From: Macrostomum hystrix
Lineage: Eukaryota > Animalia > Platyhelminthes
Reading direction: 5' to 3'
Length of the DNA stretch: 64,000 nucleotides
Assembly: GCA_950097015.1 (NCBI GenBank)
Contig: CATNEN010000001.1
Location: 11,656,001-11,720,000, forward strand
The notes beneath the pieces are model-generated. The model saw only the letters and a list, made by a program, of their open reading frames with translations, did no database searches and was not told where the DNA came from. Below are positions 29,701-63,178 of this stretch, piece after piece. A program made the translations under genes and the position numbers. Positions within the stretch are counted from its first letter, which is position 1. The number at the start of each line of letters is the position of its first letter.

Positions 29701-32700
29701 TCTTCGGATTCGATATTAGAATCTTGGGATTCGATATTAGAATCTTGGGATTCGATATTAGAATCTTTGGGATTCGATATTAGAATCTTGGGATTCGATA
29801 TTAGAATCTTGGGATTCGATATTAGAATCTTAGGATTAGATATTATAGTCTTTGGGATTCGATATTAGAATCTTAGGATTAGATATTATAACCTTTGGGA
29901 TTCGATATTAGAATCTTGGGATTCGATATTAGAATCTTGGGATTCGATATTAGAATCTTCGGATTTGATATTAGAATCTTGGGATTCGATATTAGAATCT
30001 TGGGATTCGATATTATAATCTTTGGGATTCGATATTAGAATCTTGGGATTCGATATTTGAATCTTGGGATTCGATATTAGAATCTTCGGATTTGATATTA
30101 TAATCTTGGGATTCGATATTAGAATCTTGGGATTCGATATTATAATCTTTGGGATTCGATATTAGAATCTTGGGATTCGATATTTGAATCTTGGGATTCG
30201 ATATTATAATCTTGGGATTCGATATTAGAATCTTGGGATTCGATATTAGAATCTTGGGATTCGATATTAGAATCTTGGGATTCGATATTAGAATCTTGGG
30301 ATTCGATATTAGAATCTAGGGATTCGATATTATAATCTTTGGGATTCGATATTAGAATCTTGGGATTCAATATTAGAATCTAGGGATTAGATATTAGAAT
30401 CTGGGGATTCGATATTAGAATCTGGGGATTCGATATTAGAATCTGGGGATTCGATATTAGAATCTTGGGATTCGATATTATAATCTTGGGATTCGATATT
30501 AGAATCTAGGGATTCGATATTATAATCTTTGGGATTCGATATTAGAATCTTGGGATTCAATATTAGAATCTAGGGATTAGATATTAGAATCTGGGGATTC
30601 GATATTAGAATCTGGGGATTCGATATTAGAATCTGGGGATTCGATATTAGAATCTTGGGATTCGATATTAGAATCTTGGGATTCGATATTAGAATCTTGG
30701 GATTCGATACTAGAATCTTTGGGATTCGATATTAGAATCTTGGGATTCGATATTAGAATCTTGGGATTCGATATTAGAATCTTTGGGATTCGATATTAGA
30801 ATCTGGGGATTCGATATTAGAATCTGGGGATTCGATATTAGAATCTGGGGATTCGATATTAGAATCTTTGGGATTCGATATTAGAATCTGGGGATTCGAT
30901 ATTAGAATCTGGGGATTCGATATTAGAATCTTTGGGATTCGATATTAGAATCTTTGGGATTCGATATTAGAATCTGGGGATTCGATATTAGAATCTGGGG
31001 ATTCGATATTAGAATCTTGGGATTCGATATTAGAATCTGGGGATTCGATATTAGAATCTTTGGGATTCGATATTAGAATCTTTGGGATTCGATATTAGAA
31101 TCTGGGGATTCGATATTAGAATCTTTGGGATTCGATATTAGAATCTTGGGATTCGATATTAGAATCTTTGGGATTCGATATTAGAATCTGGGGATTCGAT
31201 ATTAGAATCTTGGGATTCGATATTAGAATCTTGGGATTCGATATTAGAATCTTGGGATTCGATATTATAATCTTTGGGATTCGATATTATAATCTGGGGA
31301 TTCGATATTAGAATCTTGGGATTCGATATTAGAATCTTGGGATTCGATATTAGAATCTTGGGATTCGATATTAGAATCTTTGGGATTCGATATTAGAATC
31401 TTGGGATTCGATATTAGAATCTTGGGATTCGATATTAGAATCTTAGGATTAGATATTATAGTCTTTGGGATTCGATATTAGAATCTTAGGATTAGATATT
31501 ATAACCTTTGGGATTCGATATTAGAATCTTGGGATTCGATATTAGAATCTTGGGATTCGATATTAGAATCTTCGGATTTGATATTAGAATCTTGGGATTC
31601 GATATTAGAATCTTGGGATTCGATATTATAATCTTTGGGATTCGATATTAGAATCTTGGGATTCGATATTTGAATCTTGGGATTCGATATTAGAATCTTC
31701 GGATTTGATATTATAATCTTGGGATTCGATATTAGAATCTTGGGATTCGATATTATAATCTTTGGGATTCGATATTAGAATCTTGGGATTCGATATTTGA
31801 ATCTTGGGATTCGATATTATAATCTTGGGATTCGATATTAGAATCTTGGGATTCGATATTAGAATCTTGGGATTCGATATTAGAATCTTGGGATTCGATA
31901 TTAGAATCTTGGGATTCGATATTAGAATCTAGGGATTCGATATTATAATCTTTGGGATTCGATATTAGAATCTTGGGATTCAATATTAGAATCTAGGGAT
32001 TAGATATTAGAATCTGGGGATTCGATATTAGAATCTGGGGATTCGATATTAGAATCTGGGGATTCGATATTAGAATCTTGGGATTCGATATTATAATCTT
32101 GGGATTCGATATTAGAATCTAGGGATTCGATATTATAATCTTTGGGATTCGATATTAGAATCTTGGGATTCAATATTAGAATCTAGGGATTAGATATTAG
32201 AATCTGGGGATTCGATATTAGAATCTGGGGATTCGATATTAGAATCTGGGGATTCGATATTAGAATCTTGGGATTCGATATTAGAATCTTGGGATTCGAT
32301 ATTAGAATCTTGGGATTCGATACTAGAATCTTTGGGATTCGATATTAGAATCTTGGGATTCGATATTAGAATCTTGGGATTCGATATTAGAATCTTTGGG
32401 ATTCGATATTAGAATCTGGGGATTCGATATTAGAATCTGGGGATTCGATATTAGAATCTGGGGATTCGATATTAGAATCTTTGGGATTCGATATTAGAAT
32501 CTGGGGATTCGATATTAGAATCTGGGGATTCGATATTAGAATCTTTGGGATTCGATATTAGAATCTTTGGGATTCGATATTAGAATCTGGGGATTCGATA
32601 TTAGAATCTGGGGATTCGATATTAGAATCTTGGGATTCGATATTAGAATCTGGGGATTCGATATTAGAATCTTTGGGATTCGATATTAGAATCTTTGGGA

Positions 32701-35700
32701 TTCGATATTAGAATCTGGGGATTCGATATTAGAATCTTTGGGATTCGATATTAGAATCTTGGGATTCGATATTAGAATCTTTGGGATTCGATATTAGAAT
32801 CTGGGGATTCGATATTAGAATCTTGGGATTCGATATTAGAATCTTGGGATTCGATATTAGAATCTTGGGATTCGATACTAGAATCTTGGGATTCGATATT
32901 AGAATCTTGGGATTCGATATTAGAACCTTTGGGATTCGATATTAGAATCTGGGGATTCGATATTAGAATCTTGGGATTCGATATTAGAATCTTGGGATTC
33001 GATATTAGAATCTTGGGATTCGATATTAGAATCTTGGGATTCGATACTAGAATCTTTGGGATTCGATATTAGAATCTTGGGATTCGATATTAGAATCTGG
33101 GGATTCGATATTAGAATCTGGGGATTCGATATTAGAATCTTAGGATTAGATATTAGAATCTGGGGATTCGATATTAGAATCTTGGGATTCGATATTAGAA
33201 TCTTGGGATTAGATATTAGAACCTTGGGATTCGATATTAGAATCTTGGGATTCGATATTAGAATCTTGGGATTCGATATTAGAGTCTTGGGATTCGATAT
33301 TAGAATCTTGGGATTCGATATTAGAATCTTGGGATTCGATATTAGAATCTTGGGATTCGATATTAGAATCTTCGGATTCGATATTAGAATCTTAGGATTA
33401 GATATTATAATCTTTGGGATTCGATATTAGAATCTTAGGATTAGATATTATAACCTTTGGGATTCGATATTAGAATCTTGGGATTCGATATTAGAATCTG
33501 GGGATTCGATATTAGAATCTTGGGATTTGATATTAGAATCTTGGGATTCGATATTAGAATCTTGGGATTCGATATTATAATCTTTGGGATTCGATATTAG
33601 AATCTTGGGATTCGATATTTGAATCTTGGGATTCGATTATTAGAATCTTGGGATTCGATATTATAATCTTTGGGATTCGATATTAGAATCTTAGGATTCG
33701 ATATTATAATCTTTGGGATTCGATATTAGAATCTTGGGATTCGATATTTGAATCTTGGGATTCGATATTAGAATCTTGGGATTCGATATTATAATCTTTG
33801 GGATTCGATATTTGAATCTTGGGATTCGATATTAGAATCTTGGGATTCGATATTAGAATCTTAGGATTAGATATTATAATCTTTGGGATTCGATATTAGA
33901 ATCTTAGGATTAGATATTATAACCTTTGGGATTCGATATTAGAATCTTGGGATTCGATATTAGAATCTTGGGATTCGATATTAGAATCTTGGGATTCGAT
34001 ATTAGAATCTTGGGATTCGATATTAGAATCTTGGGATTCGATATTAGAATCTTGGGATTCGATATTAGAATCTTCGGATTCGATATTAGAATCTTAGGAT
34101 TAGATATTATAATCTTTGGGATTCGATATTAGAATCTTAGGATTAGATATTATAACCTTTGGGATTCGATATTAGAATCTTGGGATTCGATATTAGAATC
34201 TGGGGATTCGATATTAGAATCTTGGGATTTGATATTAGAATCTTGGGATTCGATATTAGAATCTTGGGATTCGATATTATAATCTTTGGGATTCGATATT
34301 AGAATCTTGGGATTCGATATTTGAATCTTGGGATTCGATTATTAGAATCTTGGGATTCGATATTATAATCTTTGGGATTCGATATTAGAATCTTAGGATT
34401 CGATATTATAATCTTTGGGATTCGATATTAGAATCTTGGGATTCGATATTTGAATCTTGGGATTCGATATTAGAATCTTGGGATTCGATATTATAATCTT
34501 TGGGATTCGATATTTGAATCTTGGGATTCGATATTAGAATCTTGGGATTCGATATTAGAATCTTAGGATTAGATATTATAATCTTTGGGATTCGATATTA
34601 GAATCTTAGGATTAGATATTATAACCTTTGGGATTCGATATTAGAATCTTGGGATTCGATATTAGAATCTTGGGATTCGATATTAGAATCTTGGGATTCG
34701 ATATTAGAATCTTGGGATTCGATATTAGAATCTTAGGATTCGATATTAGAATCTTGGGATTCGATATTAGAATCTTGGGATTCGATATTAGAATCTTGGG
34801 ATTCGATATTAGAATCTTGGGATTCGATATTAGAATCTTGGGATTTGATATTAGAATCTTGGGATTCGATATTAGAATCTTGGGATTCGATATTAGAATC
34901 TTGGGATTTGATATTAGAATCTTGGGATTCGATACTAGAATCTTAGGATTCGATATTATAATCTTTGGGATTCGATATTAGAATCTTGGGATTCGATATT
35001 TGAATCTTGGGATTCGATATTAGAATCTTGGGATTCGATATTATAATCTTTGGGATTCGATATTATAATCTTTGGGATTCGATATTTGAATCTTGGGATT
35101 CGATATTAGAATCTTGGGATTCGATATTAGAATCTTAGGATTAGATATTATAATCTTTGGGATTCGATATTAGAATCTTAGGATTAGATATTATAACCTT
35201 TGGGATTCGATATTAGAATCTTGGGATTCGATATTATAATCTTTGGGATTCGATATTAGAATCTTGGGATTCGATATTAGAATCTTGGGATTCGATATTA
35301 GAATCTTGGGATTCGATATTAGAATCTTAGGATTAGATATTAGAAACTTGGGATTCGATATTAGAATCTTGGGATTCGATATTAGAATCTGGGGATTCGA
35401 TATTAGAATATTGGGATTCGATATTAGAATCTTGGGATTCGATATTATAATCTTTGGGATTCGATATTAGAATCTTGGGATTCGATATTAGAATCTTGGG
35501 ATTCGATATTAGAATCTTGGGATTCGATACTAGAATCGGAGTGTTTTGTTTTCCTGAAAAATAGATTAGTTAATTACTGTAAGTAGGCAATTAAAACGCT
35601 TTTGGCTACTGAATTTGTTGAACTAATTCCCTCTATCTTCGCAGAAAAACCAGGGCTGCAACCACATGCACTGTTGGGAGTGCAAGACTCATTTCTGCTG

Positions 35701-35845
35701 GCTTTGTATGTCAGTTTTGGACAGCCACGATCCTTACAGACATTTTTCTAAGAAAAACGACTGCACAGGAAGACTGTTCGATGGTGCATTCGTTGAAAAT
35801 AACGAACAAGTTGCAGACGTTTCTGATGGTGAAGACGACATTTAA
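26737..35845 (+). CDS. RNF14: RNF14/ARA54-like RWD-RBR E3 ubiquitin ligase, paralogue A (3 exons)
   Basis: Exons 26737-27472, 28099-28514, 35645-35845, frame-consistent. RWD (QEFEML...YPESATPRFRLSCSWL...GEPVLWFW.EFL), RING1 (CPVC...CGHVFCDSC...CLQC), IBR (CPRC...CAHC...FCLAC...H...C), RING2 (CPGC..[24 protein letters not shown]), DPYRHF...GRLF tail. Confidence 0.9.
27575..28058. repeat. 20-bp minisatellite in intron 1 of RNF14-A
   Basis: tgacacagttatcccacatc, ~24 units. Confidence 0.95.
28565..35537. repeat. 7-kb 21/22-bp minisatellite filling intron 2 of RNF14-A
   Basis: (ttgggattcgatattagaatc)n, over 300 units. Higher-order duplications at offsets 1613 (30140 vs 31753) and 702 (33926 vs 34628). 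Confidence 0.98.
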
Positions 35846-35924
35846 CATCGTAGCATGACTTCTACGATTATTCTTGCTGGCGAAGTTTACGACAATTTTT
35901 ATTCAGCTTACTTTTCAGCTGACT

Positions 35925-36930
35925 CATTTGATGTACAGTAGAGAGATGCGTGAGAGATTGTGGGGTCAGATGAATCATTTGATGTACATTGGAGTGAAAG
36001 GGTGAGAGATTGTGGGGTCAGATGAGTGATTTGATGTACATTGGAGTGAAACGGTGAGAGATTGTGGGGTCAGATGAATGATTTGATGTACATTGGAGTG
36101 AAAGGGTGAGAGATTGTGGGGTCAGATGAATGATTTGATGCACATTGGAGTGAAAGGGTGAGAGATTGTGGGGTCAGATGAATGATTTGATGTACATTGG
36201 AGTGAAAGGGTGAGAGATTGTGGGGTCAGATGAATGATTTGATGTACATTGGAGTGAAAGGGTGAGAGATTGTGGGGTCAGATGAGTGATTTGATGCACA
36301 TTGGAGTGAAAGGGTGAGAGATTGTGGGGTCAGATGAGTGATTTGATGTACATTGGAGTGAAAGGGTGAGAGATTGTGGGGTCAGATGAGTGATTTGATG
36401 CACATTGGAGTGAAAGGGTGAGAGATTGTGGGGTCAGATGAATGATTTGATGCACATTGGAGTGAAAGGGTGAGAGATTGTGGGGTCAGATGAATGATTT
36501 GATGCACATTGGAGTGAAAGGGTGAGAGATTGTGGGGTCAGATGAATGATTTGATGTACATTGGAGTGAAAGGGTGAGAGATTGTGGGGTCAGATGAATG
36601 ATTTGATGCACATTGGAGTGAAAAGGTGAGAGATTGTGGGGTCAGATGAATGATTTGATGCACATTGGAGTGAAAGGGTGAGAGATTGTGGGGTCAGATG
36701 AATGATTTGATGTACATTGGAGTGAAAGGGTGAGAGATTGTGGGGTCAGATGAATGATTTGATGTACATTGGAGTGAAAGGGTGAGAGATTGTGGGGTCA
36801 GATGAATGATTTGATGCACATTGGAGTGAAAGGGTGAGAGATTGTGGGGTCAGATGAATGATTTGATGCACATTGGAGTGAAAGGGTGAGAGATTGTGGG
36901 GTCAGATGAATGATTTGATGTACATTGGAG
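35925..36930. repeat. 52-bp minisatellite downstream of the RNF14-A stop
   Basis: gatgtacattggagtgaaagggtgagagattgtggggtcagatgaatgattt, ~19 units; AATAAA follows at 36998. Confidence 0.96.
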
Positions 36931-37282
36931 TTAGTGGTAAAGGTTTTCTAATGTCAGTCACTTATCATGTACATGATCGTGTTACTGCGAAGCCTTCAAT
37001 AAATTCGTACTGCCTTTCATCATAATGCATCATATTTTACCCTTGGTTTTTTATTTGGCAAAGTATTTTTGCAAAAAAAGGTTTTAAAGATGTGATTTTA
37101 AATTTTCTTTTTATTTTGCTAAATTTGATTAATATTTTCTTAACTTAATGTATTATATTCTGTTTCTAAACAAATATATGTTTAATAGTATCGGTTATTA
37201 ACACCAGATGATAATTTGATTTTAGCTTTTTAACTGCTAATAGACTGATTATTAACGGCGAAACTTCCAATCTGTAACAAGC

Positions 37283-37492
37283 AAATTGAATGCAAAAATG
37301 TTGGCATTCTACTGCCAGTAGGCTACTGAGGACCCGCAAGAATTCCCTGCTGGAGTCAGAAATTAGAATGCAAAAATGTTGGCATTCTACTGCCAGTAGG
37401 CTACTGAGGACCCGCAAGAATTCCCTGCTGGAGTCAGAAATTAGAATGCAAAAATGTTGGCATTGCTACTGCCAGTAGGCTACTGAGGACCC
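37283..37492. repeat. 78-bp tandem triplication upstream of the RNF14-B start
   Basis: atgcaaaaatgttggcatt at 37290, 37368 and 37446; a single copy precedes RNF14-A (~26668). Confidence 0.92.
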
Positions 37493-37514
37493 AATTCTAA
37501 TTGTTGCAGCCAGC

Positions 37515-40500
37515 ATGAGTCGAGAATGCGTGGAGCAGGAGTTCGAGATGCTGGACAGTTTCTACTCAGCTGAGCAGCTCCAGAAGGAGATGTCGGATGG
37601 CTGCCCAGTTGGAGGCACATTCAGGGCGCAGGTTCGAATCCCGGAGTCGGGGCTTCGGCTGCAGGTCGGAGAGAATCGGCACGAGCTGCGGTTCTTGCCT
37701 CGCCTGGTGCTGCAGTTTCAGCTGGGCGGCGGCTACCCGGAGAGCGCGACGCCTCGCTTTCGCCTGTCCTGCAGCTGGCTCAGCGTCTCTCAGCTGGTTG
37801 CCATTGGCAACCGACTGCGCGAGCTGGCTGCGGAGAGAGCAGGCGAGCCGGTGCTTTGGTTCTGGTTCGAGTTTCTCGAGCGGGAGCTTTGGCACTTCCT
37901 GGAACTGGGCCCTGAACTCAGCTTCCACGGCTGGGCTGGCGAGCCTGGCTTTCACACCTTTGACAACAACTTCTCGGTTGTTCAGTTGGAGATGTCGAAA
38001 TCGGACCTGGAACAGGAGATGCTGGCTGTCGATGCGGAGGAGAGACAGCTGCAGTTTCTTCGAAGCTTTCACGAGTGTCCGGTGTGCGTCGGCTTGAAGT
38101 CCGGCAGCTCCTGTGTCAAATTCCGGCCCTGCGGTCACGTGTTCTGCGACTCCTGCGTCGCTTCGGCGTTTCGAGCCCTGCTGGAAGCTGACAGACCTGA
38201 CAGGTTCGGCTGCCTGCAGTGCTCTGGCGATGGACAGACGCATGTTGGTGGGTGGTTTCATGCAGGCATCCCACTTGTGGTTTCCCGTGCCCTATTTCTC
38301 TTATCCCTTGACCCACTATTACCTGGTCCCTTGACCCACTATTGCCTGGTCCCTGGACCCACTATTCCCTGATTCCTTGACCCAGTAATTCTTGATCCCT
38401 TGACTCACTATTCCCTGATCCTTTGACCCAGTAATTCTTGATCCCTTGACTCACTATTTATTCCCTAGTCCCTTGACCTACTATTCCCTGATCGCTTGAC
38501 CTACCGCTATCTATCCCTTGATCTATCCGCTATCTATCCCTTGATCTACCCGCTATCTATCCATTGATCTACCCGCTATCTATCCCTTGATCTACCCGCT
38601 ATCTATCCCTTGATCTACCCGCTATCTATCCCTTGATCTACCCGCTATCTATCCCTTGATCTACCCGCTATCTATCCCTTGATCTACCCGCTATCTATCC
38701 CTTGATCTACCCGCTATCTATCCCTTGATCTACCCGCTATCTATCCCTTGATCTACCCGCTATCTATCCCTTGATCTACCCGCTATCTATCCCTTGATCT
38801 ACCCGCTATCTATCCCTTGATCTACCCGCTATCTATCCCTTGATCTACCCGCTATCTATCCCTTGATCTACCCGCTATCTATCCCTTGATCTACCCGCTA
38901 TCTATCCCTTGATCTACCCGCTATCTATCCCTTGACCTACCGCTATCTATCCCTTGATCTACCCGCTATCTATCCCTTGATCTACCCGCTATCTATCCCT
39001 TGATCTACCCGCTATCTATCCCTTGATCTACCCGCTATCTATCCCTTGATCTACCCGCTATCTATCCCTTGATCTACCCGCTATCTATCCCTTGATCTAC
39101 CCGCTATCTATCCCTTGATCTACCCGCTATCTATCCATTGATCTACCCGCTATCTATCCCTTGATCTACCCGCTATCTATCCCTTGATCTACCCGCTATC
39201 TATCCCTTGATCTACCCGCTATCTATCCCTTGATCTACCCGCTATCTATCAGATCCCGCCCTGGTGAAGCGGCTGCTATCTCCGGACGAGTTCGCCAAAT
39301 ACGAGCAGCGCTTGTTCGACGCCGCACTCAGCACAATGGGCAGCTTGGACACCTGCCCGCGTTGCCAAGCAACAGTCCTAGTTGACAGGTCTGATAGCAG
39401 AAATCTGGCCCACTGTCCCGCCTGCTATCACGCCTACTGCCAGCTGTGCAGGGCCACTTATCACGGCAAGGAGCCCTGCCAAATTAGGGGCTCCAGTCTG
39501 GAACAGGTTATGGAGGCCTACATGTCCGCCGAGGGCGATAAGCGCTACAGAATGGAACAGCGCTACGGTTTGTCCAGGCTGAGAGCTCTGGAGGACGAGT
39601 GCCGAACTCAAAAGTACATGCAGGAGCAGCACAGGTGTCCTGCGTGCAAAGCCTACGTTGAGGTGTGTAAATACCCTGGTTAACCTGGTGTAGATTTTCT
39701 CGGATACCGTTATCCTACTGTGAGATGCCATTATCCCACCGTGAAATTCCATTATCCTACTGTGAGATGCCATTATCCTACTGTGAGATGCCATTATCCT
39801 ACTGTTAGATGCCATTATCCTACTGTGAGATGGCATTATCCTACTGTTAGATTCCATTATCCTACTGTGAGATGCCATTATCCCACTGAGATGCTATTAT
39901 CCTACTGTTAAATGCCATTATCCTAATGTTAGATGCCATTATCCTACTGTTAGATGCCATTATCCTACTGTTAGATGCCATTATCCTACTGTTAGATGCC
40001 ATTATCCCACCGTGAGATGCCATATCCCACCGTGGGATTCCATTATCCTACTGTGAGATGCCATTATCCCACTGAGATGCTATTATCCTTCTGTTAAATG
40101 CCATTATCCTAATGTTAGATGCCATTATCCTACTGTTAAATGCCATTATCTTAATGTTAGATGCCATTATCCTACTGTTAGATGCCATTATCCTACTGTT
40201 AGATGCCATTATCCCACCGTGAGATGCCATATCCCACCGTGGGATACCATTATCCTACTGTGAGATCCCATTATCCCACTGTGAGATCCCATTATCCAAC
40301 TGTGAGATCCCATTATCCCACTGTGAGATCCCATTATCCTCTGTTAGATCCCAAAGATCATTGTTCTAACAAAAGCGCAGCAAGTTTTCTCTCTTCAACT
40401 TAATTGCCTTCAGAAGTCGGATGGCTGCAACAAGATGACCTGCTTCAGCTGCAAGGCCTACTTCTGTTGGCTTTGCTCATGTATATTGGACCCATTCGAT

Positions 40501-40608
40501 CCATATCGGCACTTTCGCATTTCCTCCGCAGCAGCGGCGGGGGCTGTTCCTAAAGGCTGCGCTGGAAGACTATTCGAAGGAATAGTGACTGAAAATGATG
40601 ATGACTGA
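37515..40608 (+). CDS. RNF14: RNF14/ARA54-like RWD-RBR E3 ubiquitin ligase, paralogue B (3 exons)
   Basis: Exons 37515-38247, 39253-39662, 40414-40608; same intron positions and phases as copy A. RING2 CPACKAYVEKSDGCNKMTCFSCKAYFCWLC; MEQRYG linker typical of RNF14. Confidence 0.92.
38305..39250. repeat. 23-bp minisatellite (with degenerate related units) in intron 1 of RNF14-B
   Basis: tatcccttgatctacccgctatc x ~32 from ~38500, running into the AG acceptor at 39251-39252; degenerate cccttgacccactatt units at 38305-38500. Confidence 0.96.
39708..40350. repeat. 21-bp minisatellite in intron 2 of RNF14-B
   Basis: ttatcctactgtgagatgcca, ~30 units. Confidence 0.95.
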
Positions 40609-40675: not shown

Positions 40676-41512
40676 TCATTGAGTCATCTAGACCTAACCT
40701 GAACTCATTTGAGTCATCTAGACCTAACCTGAACTCATTTGAGTCATCTAGACCTAACCTGAACTCATTTAAGTCATCTAGACCTAACCTGAACTCATTT
40801 GAGTCATCTAGACCTCACCTGAACTCATTTGAGTCATCTAGACCTCACCTGAACTCATTTGAGTCATCTAGACCTCACCTGAACTCATTTGAGTCATCTA
40901 GACCTAACCTGAACTCATTTGAGTCATCTAGACCTCACCTGAACTCATTTGAGTCATCTAGACCTAACCTGAACTCATTTGAGTCATCTAGACCTCACCT
41001 GAACTCATTTGAGTCATCTTGACCTCACCTGAACTCATTTAAGTCATCGAGACCTCACCTGAACTCAATTGAGTCATCTTGACCTCACCTGAACTCAATT
41101 GAGTCATTCGAGACCTCACCTGAACTCATTTGAGTCATCTTGACCTCACCTGAACTCATTTAAGTCATCGAGACCTCACCTGAACTCAATTGAGTTTCGA
41201 GACCTCATCTGGACTCAATTGAGTCATCTTGACCTCACCTGAACTCAATTGAGTCATCTAGACCTCACCTGAACTCAATTGAGTCATCTAGACCTCACCT
41301 GAACTCAATTGAGTTTCGAGACCTCATCTGGACTCAATTGAGTCATTCGAGACCTCACCTGAACTCAATTGAGTCATTCGAGACCTTACCTGAACTCAAT
41401 TGAGTCATTCGAGACCTCATCTGGACTCAATTGAGTCATCTAGACCTCACCTGAACTCATTTGAGTCATTTAAACCTTATCTGGACTCAATTGAGTCATC
41501 TTGAGTTTATCT
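40676..41512. repeat. 30-bp minisatellite downstream of RNF14-B
   Basis: gagtcatctagacctcacctgaactcattt, ~27 units, with internal dyad actca(a/t)ttgagt. Confidence 0.96.
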
Positions 41513-42228: not shown

Positions 42229-44891
42229 ATGGCAGAGAAGCACTATCATGCCAGGTGTTGGTCCCTGCCTCGTGGAGCACTGATTCCAGAAAATTGGTGA
42301 GTTAAATAATTTGACTAGACTCATAATTATAATAATAATAATTGCAGGAGGGCTGCGGGCAATGGCACACCATTTGGTGACACTAGACCCGCAGCCTGCG
42401 AGGAGGCAATTCTACACACGTTAAGCTGACTCCTGAGCACACGCGCACACAGGTGTGTACATCTGCCCTGACTTTCTCATCGTCAGGCAGTGTACACTCT
42501 CACAGTGCCTTGGAGGTTGGCCCTCATGGGCGTAAATTGCACGACTGAGCCACCAAGCCTTCTCTCCGCGGCTGCGAGTTCAGGAATCGAGCTCAAGGAC
42601 CTTGGTGCGAGAGGCAAACGCGTCAGACAACTCTGGCACCGATCCCCTTTGACTAGACTAGCAAAAATATTCTCATACAGCTTCATTATTTTTATGCGCG
42701 AATAATTTCGCCCAGGTCACCAGCCTCCACGATTCAGTGGGGCAACCAGCAGACATTGTTCCCGCTGTCTCCAAGGTCCCTGATGTTGCGGCGCGCACAG
42801 CCTAGCAGCCGGCTCGAGGAGCTAGCCAGGCCGAAGGACTTCTCAGCCTTTCAAAAGGCGCTGTGAGTTTCTCGGCAAAGACTGGGAGGCGGCTTTTTCA
42901 ACGGGAATTTCGTCTATGGCCCCCTGACAATTATTTGCGCTGGACTCGAACGGAGCAACGAAGCCTCTTCCTACACACGAAACTCAAGAACACGGGCCAA
43001 ATTTTTGTTGTGCATCTTCTGAAACAGAAATTAAGTGTTCTAGGCGAGGATGTTCTGTGGTTGAGCTTCGCCCAATATTAAGTCTTGATCAGCGGAATGG
43101 GAGAAATTCGCATCAGGGTGTCCATAGGCGGCTGGTGCCACTTGTTGAAGGTCAGAAGGCGAAACTGGTAATTAACCGATCTCGAAATCTGCAGCTACCG
43201 CGACCTTTACCTGTACTCCTGCGGCAGCCCGGAGCCCATCTGGCCGGTGTTATCGGCGGCGTTGAGCGCTCAATGTCCGCCTCGGGTGGCTGAGCTGAGC
43301 AAGCCGAGACCGAGACAGCGCTGCGATGTCAACAACCCGAAGGAGGAGAAGCGACGAAGTGTCGATCGTCGCCAGCTGCTAGAAGAGGTCAGCGATCGTC
43401 TGTTGGCGCTGAGCCGACCGAAGCCGCAGCCGCCTCCTCCGTCTTTGTCGGCAGATCGAAAAGCCAGTTCAGCAGTCCGGTTGTCGGTGTCAAGCGAGCG
43501 CCTGGCTCGACTAGCCACTGCGCCGTCGCGTAGGCAGCGACAGATGAGCTCCGGGCAGTTCAACAGTACATCCGATCAGCATAGCGACGACCTGATGAGG
43601 CAGCCGCGAGCAATGTCGAGTTGTGCGATGTCGCAACGGATGGAGCTGCTCAGCCTGCCTCGGCCACTGCCGGCTGGCTACGAGTTTCAGGCTAGCCGAT
43701 TCGAATATATTGGTGACCTTCTTATCGTCAATCGCCTTGACAGTCTACTTTCTACTCTCATTTTTTCCTCTTTTGTATCTCCCTAAACTATTCAACCAAT
43801 CACAATGATCATTCACACCACGCCTAAAATTTTCCGCTTTATCCATTGAAACAACTTCCAGAATCACAAAACATCGAGATATTCAACGATTCTTGTCGGG
43901 GGTATCTGGTGGCAAACACCGACAATATCAGCAAAACTTTTCCGCTCACAAGAGTTTATCTAGTAATCATGTCGGCTATCCTTTTTGGTTATATTATTAA
44001 TTTATGTTGCTGACGACGATGCTGAACGTCGGATGGCTTTGAAGTTAGTTTATCGTAAAGGGTTCGATCCAAATGGCGGACTATCACGAAAATCGGTCAT
44101 TCGGTTTGGGAGCTGTTGCGAAGTAGGCAGTGTCTATTTGAAATAGCCCCGTGGTCCCCCCAAGGGGTAGAAATAGCCTGGTCTTTGTACTGTTGAGGGG
44201 GGATCGGTGGCAGAGCGGTTAACGCGTTTGCCTCTCGCACCAAGGTCCCTAAGTTCGATTCCGCGGCGAGGCCACATTCATTTGGGGCGCAGCCGCGGAG
44301 AGAAGGCTTGGGGGCTTGTCGTGCAATTGACGCCCTCGAGTGCAAACCTCCAAGGCACTGTGAGAGTGTACACTGCCTGACGATGAGAAAGTCAGGGCCG
44401 ATGTACACACCTGTGTGTGCGTGTGCTCAGGGGTCAGCGAAATGGGCAGAATTGCCTCCTCGCTGGCTGCGGGTCTAGTGTCACCAAATGATGTGCCATT
44501 GCCCGCAGCCCTCCTGAAATTATTGCTATTATTATTTTTATTCTACAGTTGTGGACTGACCCTTTAGAGCGTCAGTTTGAGAAACTGAATTCAGGCTGCA
44601 ATCATTCAAATTCAGGCTGCAGATCCCAGACGCCAAGTTCCCCACACGGCTCTGTCCTGGATGGCCTCTGAGCGCATCGATCAGCTAGCCCAGCCTCGCC
44701 GCCGACCCGGCATGCACGAGCTGAACACTCGCATGGACGCCTTCTCCGTGTCGTCAGCCGCTTTAGTAGGCTCCGCTCCGACTGGACAGCGGCGAAAGAG
44801 TCGCGGACGACAGATGCGGGAATCTCCACCGGCACCCGAACCAGCTGATGAAGATGACACTGGCGCGGAGGAAGTCTGCCAGAGGGAATGA
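42229..44891 (+). CDS. THEG (testicular haploid expressed gene) repeat protein, 4 exons
   Basis: Exons 42229-42296, 42716-42862, 43195-43712, 44623-44891 join in frame. WGNQQTLFPLS, IWPVLSAAL and repeated R(L/I)xxLAxP(K/R) units (RLEELARPK, RVAELSKPR, RLLALSRPK, RMELLSLPR, RIDQLAQPR). Confidence 0.82.
42325..42648 (-). mobile_element. SINE family B in THEG intron 1
   Basis: Reverse complement of the 44197-44540 type, with (taa)n tail. Confidence 0.85.
44090..44194. repeat. Short dispersed repeat, probably a MITE terminus; inverted copy at ~51645-51727, related sequence at ~22908-22970
   Basis: tcggtcattcggtttgggagctgt...gaagtaggc...cttt.tactgtt is shared in inverted orientation with 51645-51727. 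Confidence 0.6.
44197..44540 (+). mobile_element. SINE family B, full length (THEG intron 3)
   Basis: tRNA-like head tggcagagcggttaacgcg...gttcgattcc; 3' stem-loop ggctgcggg...cccgcagcc; (att)n tail. Confidence 0.88.
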
Positions 44892-47591: not shown

Positions 47592-50500
47592 ATGCAGCGC
47601 TCCCTGGAGCTTCTCGTTGAAAACGCCTGCGACTACGAAGACATTGGTGAGCTTCAGGACGCACTTGAATACGACGGTGGCCAGACGGTCGCCAAAATGG
47701 AACTAACCGACTTTCTTAGAAGCTACTGGTTTGCATGGAAGGCTGAAAATATGCTCATTTGCAGCTTGCTGCTAAAGTAAGCACTGATAATAATATTAGT
47801 AATAATTGCAGGAGGGCTGCGGGCAATGGCACATCATTTGGTGACACTAGACCTGTACCCAGCGAGGAGGCAATTCTGCCCATTTCGCTGACTCCTGAGC
47901 ACACACGCACACAGATAGCGTACTCAGGCACACACTCACACAAGTACATCTGCCCTGACTTTCTCATCGTCAGACAGTGTACACTGTCACTGAGCCTTGG
48001 TGGTTGGCCCCTCAACGTCTGTGCCCCAATTAAATGTGGCCTCGCCGCGGAATCGAGCTCAGGGACCTCGATGCGAGAGGCAAACGCGATAACCTCTCTG
48101 CCGCTCACATCTCGCCTTGTTTATTTCTGATCACTAGTAGGCAGTATCAAACCATCTGAAAGTAATTGTGAATCAAAACCTACTTTCAGATACAAGTTTC
48201 AACTTTACGATGACGATATCAAGGTGGGTTGGCTTATAACTTTCTGCGATTTCATTGCTCATTACTTGAACTTTGGATTCTCAGTGTAGATCTTGCTTCG
48301 ATTCCCTATGAATATCTTGCTTCGATTCTCAGTGTATTTCTAGCTTCGATTCCCTGTGCATTTCTAGCTTCGATTCCCTGTGCATTTTTAGCTTCGATTC
48401 CCGTTGTATTTCTAGCTTCGATTCCCTGTGCATTTCTAGCTTCGATTCCCGTTGTATTTCTAGCTTCGATTCCCTGTGCATTTCTAGCTTCGATTCCCGA
48501 TGTATTTCTAGCTTCGATTCCCTGTGCATTTCTAGCTTCGATTCCCGTTGTATTTCTAGCTTCGATTCCCTGTGCATTTCTAGCTTCGATTCCCGTTGTA
48601 TTTCTAGCTTCGATTCCCTGTGCATTTCTAGCTTCGATTCCCTGTGCATTTCTAGCTTCGATTCTCTGTGCATTTCTAGCTTCGATTCCCTGTGCATTTC
48701 TAGCTTCGATTCCCGTTGTATTTCTAGCTTCGATTCCCTGTGCATTTCTAGCTTCGATTCCCGTTGTATTTCTAGCTTCGATTCCCTGTGCATTTCTAGC
48801 TTCGATTCCCGTTGTATTTCTAGCTTCGATTCCCGTTGCACTTATAGCTTCGATTCCCCGCGCATATCCAAATTTAATAGTGTTGTTGGTCCTGCTTTGA
48901 TAATTAGGCTCATGTCTAACGCATTGTTACAGTTAACAGATAATACTTTCCTTTGTCCACATCCAGTACGCAGTCGAGCTAGCCAATCTTGCAAGTCGGG
49001 GCGACACGGAAGGACTTGAGAAGGCTCTGGATGAGCAGTCGCGGTGCAGCGTTGTCGTTGGCCAATTAAAAGACTGGGAGGGCCGCACAGCTTTAATGTG
49101 GGCCGCGGTCGGCTGCTGGAAACCAACTGAGCGGCATCTTGACTGCGCCAAGCTTCTGCTGGGCCGCGGCTTCGCTACGGACGCCGCCGACTTTCAAGGC
49201 AACACGGCGCTGCATCTGGCCGCTGAGGCGGGCAACCTGCCAGTCATCCAGCTGCTGCTGACTGCCGGCGCCGATCCTTTGGCACAGAACCTGCTTGGCG
49301 ACACCCCGTTGGCCATCGCCGAAGAGCACGATAGACTGGAGGCGGTAGCGATGCTGCGAGCTGCTCTTGGCGGGTAGGTTGCTGACTGTTAGGCAGGTAG
49401 ATAGCTGACAGTTAGGCAGGTAGATAGCTGACAGTTAGGCAGGTAGATAGCTGACAGTTGGGCAGGTAGATAGCTGACAGTTGAGCAGGTAGATACCTGA
49501 CAGTTAGGCAGGTAGATAGCTGACAGTTGAGCAGGTAGATACCTGACAGTTAGGCAGTTAGATAGCTGACAGTTAGGCAGGTAGATAGCTGACAGTTAGG
49601 CAGTTAGATAGCTGACAGTTAGGCAGGTAGATAGCTGACAGTTAGGCAGGTAGATAGCTGACAGTTGGGCAGGTAGATAGCTGACAGTTGAGCAGGTAGA
49701 TACCTGACAGTTAGGCAGGTAGATAGCTGACAGTTGAGCAGGTAGATACCTGACAGTTAGGCAGTTAGATAGCTGACAGTTAGGCAGGTAGATAGCTGAC
49801 AGTTAGGCAGTTAGATAGCTGACAGTTAGGCAGGTAGATAGCTGACAGTTAGGCAGGTAGATAGCTGACAGTTGGGCAGGTAGATAGCTGACAGTTAGGC
49901 AGGTAGATAGCTGACAGTTAGGCAGGTAGATAGCTGACAGTTGAGCAGGTAGATAGCTGACAGTTGGGCAGGTAGATAGCTGACAGTTGGGCAGGTAGAT
50001 AGCTGACAGTTAGGCAGTTAGATAGCTGACAGTTGGGCAGGTAGATAGCTGACAGTTGAGCAGGTAGATAGCTGACAGTTAGGCAGGTAGATAGCTGACA
50101 GTTGGGCAGGTAGATAGCTGACAGTTGGGCAGGTAGATAGCTGACAGTTAGGCAGGTAGATAGCTGACAGTTAGGCAGGTAGATAGCTGACAGTTGAGCA
50201 GGTAGATAGCTGACAGTTGGGCAGGTAGATAGCTGACAGTTGGGCAGGTAGATAGCTGACAGTTAGGCAGTTAGATAGCTGACAGTTGAGCAGGTAGATA
50301 GCTGACAGTTGGGCAGGTAGATAGCTGACAGTTGGGCAGGTAGATAGCTGACAGTTAGGCAGTTAGATAGCTGACAGTTGGGCAGGTAGATAGCTGACAG
50401 TTGGGCAGGTAGATAGCTGACAGTTAGGCAGTTAGATAGCTGACAGTTAGGCAGGTAGATAGCTGACAGTTGAGCAGGTAGATAGCTGACAGTTAGGCAG

Positions 50501-52333
50501 GTAGATAGCTGACAGTTGGGCAGGTAGATAGCTGACAGTTGGGCAGGTAGATAGCTGACAGTTAGGCAGGTAGATAGCTGACAGTTAGGCAGGTAGATAG
50601 CTGACAGTTGAGCAGGTAGATAGCTGACAGTTGGGCAGGTAGATAGCTGACAGTTGGGCAGGTAGATAGCTGACAGTTAGGCAGTTAGATAGCTGACAGT
50701 TGGGCAGGTAGATAGCTGACAGTTGAGCAGGTAGATAGCTGACAGTTAGGCAGGTAGATAGCTGACAGTTGGGCAGGTAGATAGCTGACAGTTGGGCAGG
50801 TAGATAGCTGACAGTTAGGCAGGTAGATAGCTGACAGTTAGGCAGGTAGATAGCTGACAGTTGAGCAGGTAGATAGCTGACAGTTGGGCAGGTAGATAGC
50901 TGACAGTTGGGCAGGTAGATAGCTGACAGTTAGGCAGTTAGATAGCTGACAGTTGGGCAGGTAGATAGCTGACAGTTGAGCAGGTAGATAGCTGACAGTT
51001 AGGCAGGTAGATAGCTGACAGTTGGGCAGGTAGATAGCTGACAGTTAGGCAGGTAGATAGCTGACAGTTAGGCAGGTAGATAGCTGACAGTTGGGCAGGT
51101 AGATAGCTGACAGTTAGGCAGGTAGATAGCTGACAGTTAGGCAGGTAGATAGCTGACAGTTAGGCAGGTAGATAGCTGACAGTTGGGCAGGTAGATAGCT
51201 GACAGTTGGGCAGGTAGATAGCTGACAGTTGGGCAGGTAGATAGCTGACAGTTAGGCAGTTAGATAGCTGACAGTTAGGCAGGTAGATAGCTGACAGTTG
51301 AGCAGGTAGATAGCTGACAGTTAGGCAGGTAGATAGCTGACAGTTGGGCAGGTAGATAGCTGACAGTTAGGCAGGTAGATAGCTGACAGTTAGGCAGGTA
51401 GATAGCTGACAGTTAGGCAGGTAGATAGCTGACATTGCAGCTGGAACATTCCGAATTCACTTTCAGTGATGCAGCTGTCACCGCTGATTCGCAGTCTCGC
51501 AGCACAGATGAGGATCAAGATGATCCAGAATTTGTCACACCAAATCTGGACAGCGAGCTAGTGCAGTCCAGTCTTGAGTCCTGCTATCAGTATGAGGTGA
51601 CAATTGAGCCAGAAAAAATTAAGGTAAGATATTTATTGTTCCATTAACAGTAGAAAGGTATTCCCCCAAGGGAAAGACTACGGGACAGCCTACTTCACGA
51701 CAGCTCCCAAACCGAATGACCGACTTTAAGCAGAAGCAGAAAAATTTTGCCTACATTGGAGGCTTTTGTTGTCTTTCTACTGTTATTACACAAGCGATAA
51801 ATAAGAATGCCTAAACAATTCTATCTTTCCAGCGGATCACTCAGCTAGTTTCAGCTGTCACCCATGGTCAACTAGAATTTGTAAAACGTGTCGAAACGGA
51901 AGCCTTGGTAACACTGCGCCTCAGCAAGTACGTCACGGTGCTTCACCTGGCTGCTGACACCAGATCCAAAGCTGCGACCTATGCGGCTTGCATTGCCCAG
52001 CTGCTGGAGGCTGGCGCCGATACGAAGGCAAAGAACGCAGACGGTGACACGGCTGCACACATTGCGGCTAGGCGGGACAATGTCTCCATGCTTGGTGTGC
52101 TGCCATTTGAAGACAAGTTCCTGACGAACAATGCCGGACTGACACCGCTGATGGAGGCAGTTCAGTTGCAGAGATGGGCCAGCTTCAAGCACCTGCTGCA
52201 CCTGTTCAGGCAGGCCAGATACTGCCAGGAGAAGCAGCGGTATCTGGGCGTGAAGGACAAGTCGGGCATGACTGCGCTAGACCTAGCCAAGGAAACTGGA
52301 GACCCGGACATGATCGAGGTCTTGGAAACGTAA
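47592..52333 (+). CDS. Ankyrin-repeat protein, 5 exons
   Basis: Exons 47592-47776, 48190-48223, 48967-49373, 51467-51623, 51833-52333 join in frame. ANK motifs GRTALMWAA, GNTALHLAA, GDTPLAIA, TVLHLAA, GDTAAHIAA, GLTPLMEA, GMTALDLA; an acidic linker separates two ANK blocks. Confidence 0.82.
47788..48105 (-). mobile_element. SINE family B in ankyrin gene intron 1
   Basis: Reverse-complement copy with small internal indels. Confidence 0.82.
48283..48862. repeat. 24-bp minisatellite in ankyrin gene intron 2
   Basis: gcttcgattccc(tgtgc/gttgt)atttcta, ~24 units, two variants often alternating. Confidence 0.96.
49374..51440 (+). repeat. 23-bp minisatellite forming almost all of ankyrin gene intron 3
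   Basis: GTAGATAGCTGACAGTT(AG/GG/GA)GCAG x 89 from 49374 to 51420 (2047 = 89 x 23), plus a final 20-nt unit ending TTGCAG. Confidence 0.98.
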
Positions 52334-52952: not shown

Positions 52953-53120
52953 ATGTTATTTTTTACGAGCGTGTTGTTATTAATTTTCAAAGACTTTCTC
53001 ATCGTGAGGCAGTGTACACTGTTACTGTGCCTTGGGACGTTGGGGGAAATGAGGATTCGAACTCACGGACCTTGGTGCGAGGTTTGGAGTCTTCCACTCA
53101 CTGCCGCGCTGTCCCTAAAA

Positions 53121-53630
53121 ATGGATTTTCAGCAAGAGAAGCTGCGGGACTCATTGATGACTCTGGTTGAGAGCGGCGACGCAGAAAAACGTCTACGGCA
53201 GCTGGTGAAGCGGGTCGACAGCGACCTACCCGACGCTTGGGGTCGAACCATCCTCATGCGGGCTTCTTGGAGCAGGCGATGCCACATTGCGACACTTCAG
53301 CAACTGGCGGATGTCTGCGATCCGACCTGCGCTGACAGTTTCGGATCTGGCTGCATCCACTGGGCAGCTCGCTACGACAACGAGGCGGCCGTGAAGCTTC
53401 TAGTTGATGCCGGAGCTTGGGTGGATGCTGTTGATCAGGCAGGTAGAACCGCCCTGATGTGCGCCGCCGAGAATGACCGACTGAGCGCTGCGGAGGCGCT
53501 GCTCAACGTTGGAGCCAACATGCGACTCAGAGACTCGGAAGGTCGATCAGCAGAACAATGGGCTTTGATGAAGCAGTACTCGGACATTGCGACTCGACTA
53601 AATCAACTGTGCTCAGCTAAACAGCAGTGA
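53121..53630 (+). CDS. Small ankyrin-repeat protein (169 aa from ATG 53121)
   Basis: GRTILMRAS, GSGCIHWAA, GRTALMCAA, GRSAEQWA. The upstream part of the 52881 ORF is SINE/repeat-derived. It could instead be a terminal exon (acceptor at 53132). Confidence 0.82.
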   Translation: MDFQQEKLRDSLMTLVESGDAEKRLRQLVKRVDSDLPDAWGRTILMRASWSRRCHIATLQQLADVCDPTCADSFGSGCIHWAARYDNEAAVKLLVDAGAWVDAVDQAGRTALMCAAENDRLSAAEALLNVGANMRLRDSEGRSAEQWALMKQYSDIATRLNQLCSAKQQ

Positions 53631-57499: not shown

Positions 57500-57835
57500 G
57501 GGTCAGTGGCAGATTGGTCAAACGCGTTTGCCTCTCGCACCAAGGTCCCTAAGTTCGATTCCGCGGCGAGGCCACATTTATTTGGGGCGCAGCCGCGGAG
57601 AGAAGGCTTGGGGGCTTGTCGTGCAATTTACGCCATCGAGGGCCAACCTCCAAGGCACAGTGAGAGTGTACACTGCCTGACGATGAGAAAGTCAGGGCAG
57701 ATGTACACACCTGTGTGCGCGTGTGCTCAGGAGTCAGCTAAACGTGTGTAGAATTGCCTCCTCGCTGGCTGCGGGTCTAGTGTCACTGAATGATGTGCCA
57801 TTGCCCGCAGACCTCCTGAAATTATTTTTGTTAAT
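57500..57835 (+). mobile_element. SINE family B, full length
   Basis: Highly similar to 44197-44540. Confidence 0.88.

Positions 57836-58103: not shown

Positions 58104-63178
<5,075 letters not shown>

What the first reader, a model, noticed from the sequence alone, without database searches (positions are those of the whole stretch)
49374..51466. Intron built from ~90 in-register mini-intron units (GT-branchpoint-AG): candidate recursive-splicing array
Seen: the array starts exactly at the inferred 5' splice site (GG|GTAGGTTGCTGACTGTTAGGCAG). It continues as 23-nt units GTAGATAGCTGACAGTTRRGCAG with no net indel (89 x 23 nt). Most junctions read CAG|GTAG (a minority CAG|TTAG), and most units carry a branchpoint-like GCTGAC. 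Removing a whole number of units usually leaves a new GT donor at the exon edge. Established: AG|GT ratchet points mediate recursive splicing in long animal introns. Inference: this intron could be removed stepwise, act as a splice-site decoy, or have arisen by tandem amplification of its first 23 nt. Caveats: single 23-nt units are below normal animal minimum intron size, and there is no polypyrimidine tract.
Basis: partly seen in the sequence, partly recalled or inferred. Interest (0 to 1): 0.82.

Follow-up and report, generated by a model that had tools for sequence, protein, structure and literature searches.

The report
Splice-donor minisatellite in flatworm intron
A 23-letter stretch at the start of one intron of a Macrostomum hystrix ankyrin-repeat gene has been copied about 90 times, which is an ordinary event in a genome where over a quarter of the DNA is such repeats, and the copies lack the signals needed for step-by-step splicing.

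Summary
There are 89 in-register 23-nt units plus a 14-nt partial unit, with no indels. They start at the 5' splice site of intron 3 of a five-exon ankyrin-repeat gene (predicted; no RNA or protein support was found). 78 units begin GTAG, 11 begin TTAG, and all end CAG.

The recursive-splicing reading is not supported. The inner AGs have fewer upstream pyrimidines than any of nine real acceptors in the window. The inner GTAGAT sites lack the +5 G found in all nine real donors sampled (eight in the window, one in a paralogue), and they pair with U1 3 kcal/mol less well than the first site. The GT itself is one of only four variable unit positions.

The genome is the published M. hystrix assembly. 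In a 240-kb sample, 28% is tandem repeat, with one minisatellite per 3 kb and a median unit of 24 nt. AGGT is not enriched in units. About 2% of arrays should span a donor by chance.

The unit is unique to this locus and grew by multi-unit block duplication. The best reading is a locally born "mirage"-type donor minisatellite, as in amphioxus Adh3 and globin genes and human F7 intron 7.

This scan has noted the same kind at least 13 times elsewhere in this genome. No RNA evidence for this gene could be reached.

The parts
47592..47776 (+). Exon 1 of the ankyrin-repeat gene (ATG ... CTAAA|GTAAGC, ends in phase 2)
   Evidence: ORF list; sequence and frames. Predicted only; no RNA evidence.
48190..48223 (+). 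Exon 2, 34 nt (tttcag|ATACAAG...ATCAAG|GTGGGT)
48291..48865 (+). Separate 24-nt x 24 minisatellite inside intron 2. It starts about 67 nt after the donor and ends about 101 nt before the acceptor.
   Evidence: TRF; flanks
48967..49373 (+). Exon 3, ankyrin repeats (Pfam Ank_2, E=3e-26). It ends ...CTTGGCGG in phase 2.
   Evidence: Paralogue L015 has its exon end at the same position and phase.
49374..49396 (+). First unit, GTAGGTTGCTGACTGTTAGGCAG. It carries the inferred authentic donor CGG|GTAGGT. It differs from the consensus at 3 positions, including +5 G, which is A in all the other units.
   Evidence: U1 duplex -11.1 kcal/mol, the strongest of 10 sites tested.
49369..51434 (+). The 23-nt minisatellite, consensus GTAGATAGCTGACAGTTAGGCAG, 89 full units plus a 14-nt partial unit. 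It has higher-order blocks: 18 units repeated exactly at a lag of 29 units, 14 at lag 11, and 11 at lag 9.
   Evidence: Unique in the 220-Mb genome.
51421..51434 (+). Terminal partial unit GTAGATAGCTGACA. On the boundary-duplication model this is the ancestral first 14 nt of the intron. Its CTGAC lies 33 nt before the acceptor and is a plausible real branch site.
   Evidence: The model and the branch-site role are inference.
51435..51466 (+). Unique intron tail TTGCAGCTGGAACATTCCGAATTCACTTTCAG, with the real acceptor (12/20 upstream pyrimidines)
51467..51623 (+). Exon 4, 157 nt (|TGATGCA...ATTAAG|GTAAGA), no Pfam hit, a single copy in the genome
51833..52333 (+). Exon 5, ankyrin repeats, ending at stop codon TAA 52331-52333. 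The predicted protein is about 427 aa.

Best explanation
This is a locally born minisatellite of the 'mirage' or splice-donor type.

Origin (inferred): a roughly 23-nt segment at the exon 3/intron 3 border of a Macrostomum hystrix ankyrin-repeat gene was duplicated in tandem. The segment was probably the last few exon bases plus the first 14 intron bases of a once short, about 46-nt intron. Slippage or unequal exchange of single units and multi-unit blocks then expanded it to about 90 copies. Because the seed contained the donor, every copy carries ...CAG|GTAG, so the array can be parsed as GT...AG units in register with the exon edge.

Splicing (inferred, not shown): splicing most likely uses the first, strongest donor (CGG|GTAGGT) and the single real acceptor at 51466. 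The whole array is then removed in one step as ordinary intron sequence. The inner copies would be silent pseudo-donors, as shown experimentally for the human F7 intron 7 minisatellite. The array itself probably has no function.
For: The array and its register are real.

The donor position is fixed by frame closure, by the phase match to exon 4, and by a paralogue with an intron at the same codon phase.

The unit occurs nowhere else in the 220-Mb genome at up to 2 mismatches: 88 of 88 hits lie in this array. The array was therefore born in place.

The layout fits a boundary-spanning duplication. TRF starts the array 5 nt inside the exon. The array ends with exactly the 14-nt 5' part of the unit, followed by 32 unique nt and the acceptor.

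The first unit is the most divergent, and it alone keeps +5 G. All 9 other real donors seen have +5 G. M. hystrix U1 has the canonical 5' end AUACUUACCUG. U1 duplex energies are -11.1 kcal/mol for the first site, -8.0 for inner GTAGAT and -1.3 for TTAGAT.

The inner AGs are poor acceptors: 7/20 upstream pyrimidines, against 9-16/20 for nine real acceptors.

Only four unit positions vary, and one of them is G1 of the GT (11 of 88 units have T). There is therefore no sign of selection on the inner donors.

Exact multi-unit blocks (18 units at lag 29, 14 at lag 11, 11 at lag 9) show ordinary minisatellite turnover.

Genome context: 27.9% of a 240-kb even sample is tandem repeat. It holds 77 minisatellites with a median unit of 24 nt, and 7 of the 77 have at least 85 copies. 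All six array-bearing introns examined in the window have short unique remainders, about 30-170 nt.

The published annotation gives 34,543 genes with about 5 introns each in 220 Mb. On those numbers, random seeding of 23-nt duplications would hit a donor about 1.8% of the time. I saw 1 donor-anchored and 1 acceptor-anchored array among 92.

Precedents are the amphioxus 'mirages' (PMC3087553) and human F7 IVS7, where the upstream donor wins over identical pseudo-sites (PMC1557585).
Against: There is no RNA evidence for this gene. Three exon-wise protein searches and one representative search gave nothing usable. Use of the first donor alone is therefore inferred, not shown.

Homology between the exon tail and the 3' part of the unit is weak: 5/9 matches, my binomial estimate p about 0.05. 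The seed may have been purely intronic.

The inner GTAGAT sites pair with U1 as well as some real donors do (-8.0 against -4.5 to -9.9), so some cryptic use cannot be excluded.

The samples of splice sites (9 donors, 9 acceptors) and of the genome (240 kb of one contig) are small.
Confidence: 0.85

Rival explanations
1. Recursive or stepwise splicing: the intron is removed in pieces, using the AG|GT junctions between units as ratchet points.
For: 77 inner junctions read CAG|GT, every unit has a branch-like CTGAC, and removing whole units regenerates a GT at the exon edge. Inner donors pair with U1 at -8.0 kcal/mol.
Against: The inner AGs lack a pyrimidine tract: 7/20 pyrimidines, and 3/10 in positions -4 to -13, below all nine real acceptors.

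Each unit holds five AGs, so ending in AG is not special.

CTGAC lies only 11 nt from the unit's end. A 23-nt unit is below usual animal intron sizes (general knowledge). Known ratchet points sit in introns of tens of kb (general knowledge), and this intron is 2.1 kb.

G1 varies freely, with 11 TTAG units. AGGT is not enriched in minisatellite units of this genome: 10/77 observed against 15-17 expected. Two other AGGT arrays in the window are antisense to the genes beside them; only the alpha-amylase one is intronic.
Confidence: 0.03
2. Functional pseudo-donor (decoy) array: the roughly 77 U1-binding sites tune the gene's output. They might slow or leak splicing into stop-containing, NMD-targeted transcripts, or load U1 along the intron.
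For: The inner sites are credible U1 binders. All three frames of the array are closed within 12 codons or fewer, so use of an inner donor would add n x 23 nt and a premature stop.
Against: There is no sign of constraint. The donor G is one of the four variable positions, and the array is turning over by block duplication. Arrays of this size and unit length are everywhere in this genome, and most have no AGGT. In the F7 model, identical pseudo-sites stay silent (PMC1557585).
Confidence: 0.07
3. Imported repeat: the array belongs to a dispersed satellite or transposon-borne family that landed or spread next to the donor, so its register with the splice site is a coincidence.
For: Units of independent arrays share short words such as GGTAGAT (6/92 arrays, 0.46 expected) and TGACAG (9/92). 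Arrays with related 15-25-nt units exist elsewhere on C1.
Against: The full unit at up to 2 mismatches is confined to this locus. A 17-nt core at up to 3 mismatches has no more genome hits than its reversed control: 1883 against 1520. The first unit, which is the donor itself, matches the consensus at 20/23 positions. The array ends in phase with a boundary duplication.
Confidence: 0.04
4. Assembly artefact: the copy number or the whole array was inflated by long-read assembly.
For: The assembly is based on PacBio reads assembled with canu. Long arrays are hard to size exactly.
Against: The array has structured, non-random variant patterns and higher-order blocks. It has clean unique flanks. 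The assembly was polished and has a high quality value. Comparable arrays occur every 3 kb.
Confidence: 0.01

Closest known systems
Amphioxus 'mirages': minisatellites that duplicate exon-intron boundaries (Adh3, Canestro et al. 2002, as cited in PMC3087553; globin genes BflGb6 and BflGb9, PMC3087553)
   Same: A tandem repeat is anchored on an exon-intron boundary, and the inner copies carry AG/GT signals. Normal splicing is reported as undisturbed. Units are homogenised within the array, with divergent edge units. Adh3 units are 10-72 bp.
   Different: Here the exon part of the unit is at most about 5-9 nt and only weakly recognisable. The copy number, about 90, is much higher than the 3-6 of the globin cases. 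The host is a flatworm. No RT-PCR or RNA evidence is available for this locus.
Human F7 intron 7 37-bp VNTR (Borensztajn et al. 2006, PMC1557585)
   Same: The first element of the minisatellite spans the exon-intron boundary, so the authentic donor is followed by a train of pseudo-donors. These are functional in principle but silent, because the most upstream site is selected.
   Different: F7 pseudo-sites are identical to the real donor. Here the inner sites differ at +5 (A for G) and at -2, and bind U1 3 kcal/mol less well. F7 has a handful of repeats, not about 90. The scanning rule has not been tested in flatworms.
Recursive splicing ratchet points of long Drosophila and vertebrate introns (general knowledge)
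   Same: Juxtaposed AG|GT, so that splicing to the AG would regenerate a 5' splice site.
   Different: Ratchet points have a strong pyrimidine tract and a consensus GTAAGT, are single conserved sites, and lie in introns of tens of kb. Here there is no pyrimidine tract, the donor is GTAGAT, the sites are 23 nt apart, and the intron is 2.1 kb.
Intron gain by tandem duplication of an AGGT-containing exon segment (Rogozin-type model; also discussed for mirages in PMC3087553)
   Same: A tandem duplication creates GT...AG-bounded segments.
   Different: The intron position is shared with a paralogue of 47% protein identity. The intron therefore predates the array. Nothing suggests that a new intron or exon was created.

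Membership tests
Splice-donor ('mirage'-type) minisatellite | Head-to-tail array with minisatellite-size units | tested here: met
   23 nt x 89.8 copies, 94% matches, no indels
Splice-donor ('mirage'-type) minisatellite | The first unit coincides with the authentic exon-intron boundary, so the donor is reiterated | tested here: met
   The array starts at 49369-49374 and the donor is at 49373|49374. The donor is fixed by frame, by phase and by the paralogue's intron position. 77 inner copies keep GT.
Splice-donor ('mirage'-type) minisatellite | The unit includes exon sequence, that is, the duplication truly spans the boundary | tested here: inconclusive
   The exon tail TCTTGGCGG matches the unit tail GTTRGGCAG at 5/9 positions (my binomial estimate p about 0.05). 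The array ends after exactly the 14-nt intron part of the unit, as that model predicts.
Splice-donor ('mirage'-type) minisatellite | Born locally, not a copy of a dispersed repeat | tested here: met
   88 of 88 genome hits at up to 2 mismatches lie in this array. The 17-mer core has no excess of hits over its reversed control.
Splice-donor ('mirage'-type) minisatellite | The authentic, most upstream donor is used and the inner copies are silent | not testable with these tools
   No transcript or protein of this gene was found. The first site has the best U1 pairing.
Recursive-splicing ratchet array | Juxtaposed 3' and 5' splice-site dinucleotides (AG|GT) | tested here: met
   77 inner junctions read CAG|GT and 11 read CAG|TT
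Recursive-splicing ratchet array | A functional 3' splice site (pyrimidine tract and branch site at a workable distance) before each AG | tested here: not met
   7/20 pyrimidines, and 3/10 in positions -4 to -13, lower than all nine real acceptors of the window (9-16/20). CTGAC lies 11 nt from the unit's end. There are five AGs per unit.
Recursive-splicing ratchet array | A strong regenerated 5' splice site | tested here: inconclusive
   GTAGAT has A at +5, whereas 9 of 9 real donors have G. Its U1 duplex of -8.0 is still within the real range of -4.5 to -11.1.
Recursive-splicing ratchet array | Splicing intermediates or lariats at the inner junctions | not testable with these tools
   No RNA data could be reached
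Intron created by tandem duplication of an AGGT segment | The intron is absent at this position in relatives or paralogues | tested here: not met
   Paralogue L015 has an intron at the same codon and phase (GG|GTAAGC)

The most novel reading that the evidence does not exclude
The roughly 77 inner pseudo-donors are not inert. They bind U1 along 2 kb of intron and measurably change the gene's output. This could happen through delayed or leaky splicing into NMD substrates, or through occasional two-step removal that uses an inner donor with the real acceptor. If so, copy-number variation of such arrays, of which this genome may hold on the order of a thousand, would be a widespread source of heritable variation in expression in Macrostomum.
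Probability: 0.05. Interest if true: 0.6.

Novelty: new member of a known kind. Interest (0 to 1): 0.15.

Why it matters
On its own this locus matters little. It is one more case of a known curiosity, a minisatellite seeded on a splice donor, in a genome that makes minisatellites on a very large scale.

Its value is as a marker of that wider picture. In M. hystrix about 28% of the sampled DNA is tandem repeat, and all six array-bearing introns examined here consist of a short original intron plus one locally born array. Arrays that reiterate donors or acceptors are therefore expected by the hundreds.

That makes the species a natural test bed for how the spliceosome chooses the first of many equivalent 5' splice sites. 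This question was studied so far with the human F7 minigene. It also makes the species useful for studying what drives minisatellite birth.

Tried and rejected
(1) RNA or protein evidence for the exon 3-exon 4 junction. The exon 3 peptide against 1.8 billion representatives returned only giant ankyrin proteins. Word searches with exon 3, exon 5 and exon 4 found nothing. The predicted 427-aa protein is longer than the size window that any single exon can reach.

(2) A larger genome sample. A smaller request gave 40 kb more, so the statistics rest on 240 kb plus the window.

(3) Homology between this intron and the paralogue's intron, to recover the ancestral intron. None was found (local alignment p = 0.33).

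(4) A dispersed family for the unit. Rejected.

It was done without regard to strand, because no annotation was at hand. There is no enrichment, and if anything a deficit. None of nine AGGT-containing arrays in the random sample abuts an open reading frame in the way this one does.

(6) Reading GTAAGC after exon 5 as a donor. Rejected: the frame ends there at a TAA stop, and the next ankyrin ORF (53121-53630) starts with its own ATG in a phase that does not fit.
Full report
WHAT IS THERE

TRF reports a 23-nt array of 89.8 copies at window 49369-51434, with 94% matches, no indels and score 3593. Parsed from 49374 there are 89 complete units.
- The consensus is GTAGATAGCTGACAGTTAGGCAG.
- 78 units start GT and 11 start TT. 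All end CAG.
- 85 carry GCTGAC and all 89 carry CTGAC.
- Leaving out the first unit, only four positions vary: 1 (G77/T11), 8 (G84/C4), 18 (A44/G44) and 19 (G74/A14).
- A 14-nt partial unit (GTAGATAGCTGACA, 51421-51434) follows. After it come 32 unique bases ending in the acceptor CACTTTCAG| at 51466.

The one correction is that the repeat ends at 51434.

THE HOST GENE AND THE SPLICE SITES

The array fills intron 3 of a five-exon gene on the + strand.
- Exon 1 is 47592-47776.
- Exon 2 is 48190-48223.
- Exon 3 is 48967-49373.
- Exon 4 is 51467-51623.
- Exon 5 is 51833-52333 and ends at a TAA stop.
- The predicted protein is about 427 aa. Exons 3 and 5 are ankyrin repeats (Pfam Ank_2, E = 3e-26 and 4e-11).

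The donor at 49373|49374 is supported in three ways. The frame closes at once (GG|G TAG). Exon 4 resumes in the matching phase (GG|T GAT). A paralogue 140 kb away (L015, 48% identity to exon 3) ends its exon at the same codon and phase (GCTGG|GTAAGC). The shared position also shows that the intron is older than the array.

I searched the exons separately and did not search a joined spliced model.

THE ORGANISM

The window's assembly has 220,453,370 bases in 42 contigs. That is exactly the published Macrostomum hystrix assembly (PMC10468722). It is not human.

GENOME CONTEXT

I sampled 24 evenly spaced 10-kb pieces of contig 1. Results of the sample:
- 27.9% of the sample is tandem repeat.
- It holds 77 minisatellites with units of at least 10 nt and at least 4 copies, or one per 3.1 kb.
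- The median unit is 24 nt (interquartile range 20-33) and the median copy number is 25.
- 7 of the 77 have at least 85 copies.

A 23-nt x 90 array is thus typical in unit length and only moderately large.

In the window I examined six introns that hold an array: Ank introns 2 and 3, the RBR-A intron, RBR-B introns 1 and 2, and one alpha-amylase intron. Each consists of a short unique remainder, about 30-170 nt, plus one array. Of the intronic arrays examined:
- one starts at the donor (this one);
- one ends exactly at an acceptor (38296-39250);
- the others start 12-67 nt after their donor.

IS THE REGISTER WITH THE SPLICE SITE SURPRISING?

Any unit containing AGGT can be written as GT...AG. 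The only real coincidence is that the array begins at the donor.

The annotation gives 34,543 genes with about 5 introns each in 220 Mb. On those numbers a randomly placed 23-nt duplication overlaps a donor about 1.8% of the time. At about 0.32 arrays per kb, that predicts on the order of a thousand such arrays.

For a short intron the chance is much higher. It is about one in three for a 46-nt intron and a 23-nt unit.

I saw 1 donor-anchored and 1 acceptor-anchored array among 92, which agrees with random seeding. The sample is small.

AGGT, on either strand, occurs in 10 of 77 units of the random sample. Mono- and dinucleotide shuffles give 15-17, so there is no enrichment.

None of nine AGGT arrays in that sample abuts an open frame.

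In the window, the CAG|GTAG array at 58723-60632 lies antisense in an alpha-amylase intron. The CAGGTGAGG array at 40679-41501 is antisense to, and downstream of the stop codon of, the RBR-B gene.

ORIGIN

The full unit, at up to 2 mismatches, occurs 88 times in the genome, and all 88 are in this array. A 17-nt core at up to 3 mismatches has no more hits than its reversed control. The array was therefore born where it lies.

Its layout fits a duplication of about 9 exon bases plus 14 intron bases.
- TRF starts the array 5 nt inside the exon.
- The 3' part of the unit (GTTRGGCAG) matches the exon tail (TCTTGGCGG) at 5/9 positions. This is weak (my estimate p about 0.05).
- The array stops after exactly the 14-nt 5' part of the unit and then runs into unique intron.

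That would make the ancestral intron about 46 nt. This is inference.

Exact multi-unit blocks show growth by ordinary slippage or unequal exchange. 18 units recur at a lag of 29 units, 14 at lag 11, and 11 at lag 9.

COULD IT BE SPLICED STEPWISE?

Donor side.
- M. hystrix U1 has the canonical 5' end AUACUUACCUG.
- Duplex energies with U1 are -11.1 kcal/mol for the first site (CGG|GTAGGT), -8.0 for inner CAG|GTAGAT and -1.3 for TTAGAT. Seven other real donors give -4.5 to -9.9.
- All nine real donors I could define have G at +5. The inner units have A.
- The inner sites are therefore credible but weaker pseudo-donors.

Acceptor side.
- Nine real acceptors have 9-16 pyrimidines in the 20 bases before CAG (median 14). 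The inner units have 7, and 3/10 in positions -4 to -13. That is below every real site.
- Each unit has five AGs, so there is no AG-free zone.
- CTGAC lies 11 nt from the unit's end.

Other points.
- The donor G is one of the four positions free to vary.
- All three frames of the array close within 12 codons. Any use of an inner donor would therefore give a truncated product.

Taken together, the sequence argues against recursive removal. It favours one-step removal from the first donor to the one real acceptor, with the last CTGAC, 33 nt upstream, as the likely branch site.

WHAT IS KNOWN

Minisatellites that reiterate exon-intron borders were named 'mirages' in amphioxus Adh3 and were also found in amphioxus globin genes, where splicing is normal (PMC3087553).

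In human F7 intron 7 the first 37-bp element spans the border. The identical downstream pseudo-donors are functional but silent, because the most upstream site is chosen (PMC1557585).

The present array is a new, large flatworm member of this kind.

Earlier notes of this scan list at least 13 similar cases elsewhere in the same genome. Several follow-ups report that the available RNA uses the first copy. Those are unchecked AI notes. They agree with my reading but are not evidence for this locus.

LIMITS

- No RNA or protein evidence for this gene could be obtained.
- The splice-site samples are small (9 and 9).
- The genome sample is 240 kb of one contig.
- The strand test lacks gene annotation outside the window.

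Noticed in passing
L016-L039 (24 x 10 kb of G000 contig 1) and the whole window: 27.9% of an even 240-kb sample (32.6% of the window) is tandem repeat, with about one minisatellite per 3 kb. This exceeds the 22.9% total RepeatMasker fraction published for M. hystrix, whose authors left the nature of the repeats open.
   Followed up: partly
units of 92 arrays in the window and L016-L039: Independent minisatellites share short words far above mononucleotide-shuffle expectation: TGGGATT in 9/92 arrays (0.38 expected), GTCTAAC(AG) in 6 (0.28), GGTAGAT in 6 (0.46) and TGACAG in 9 (1.05). This could reflect a common seed, a sequence preference of the expansion process, or low-complexity bias. It was not tested against stricter nulls.
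   Followed up: partly
window 38296-39250 (+ strand gene): Two adjoining 23-nt arrays fill intron 1 of an RWD/RING-IBR (RBR) gene and end exactly at its acceptor (ctatctatcag|ATCCC). The unit seems to span the acceptor, with CAG replaced by TTG in the inner copies. This is the 3' splice-site counterpart of the present finding.
   Followed up: partly
window 28527-35537: A 7-kb array of 21 nt x 330 starts 12 nt after the donor GAG|GTGCGT of the upstream RBR paralogue. The unique remainder of that intron is only about 119 nt.
   Followed up: partly
window 58723-60632: A 20-nt x 95 array whose units read CAG|GTAG on the + strand lies in an intron of an alpha-amylase gene encoded on the - strand. 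Its splice-like motif is therefore antisense to the host.
   Followed up: partly
window 26000-40600: Two tandem paralogous RBR E3-ligase-like genes lie on the + strand. A single-exon ankyrin paralogue (53121-53630) sits directly downstream of the ankyrin gene studied here. Further ankyrin paralogues lie in a 4.8-kb tandem triplet at G000:C1:22.16 Mb.
   Followed up: no
window 42483-42700, 44207-44410, 47800-48130, 53000-53100, 57506-57750 (both orientations): A dispersed repeat of about 0.2-0.3 kb recurs in introns and between genes. It shows up as recurring pseudo-peptides such as ...LPLAPRSLSSIP... and ...DFLIVRQCTL.... It is probably a SINE-like element. A tRNA-like hit lies at 62919-62991 (-).
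   Followed up: no
G000 contigs C15, C17 and C42 (L040-L042): U1 snRNA genes, identical at 151.7 bits, sit in tandem units of about 11.7 kb on three small contigs, with one more copy on C1.
   Followed up: no
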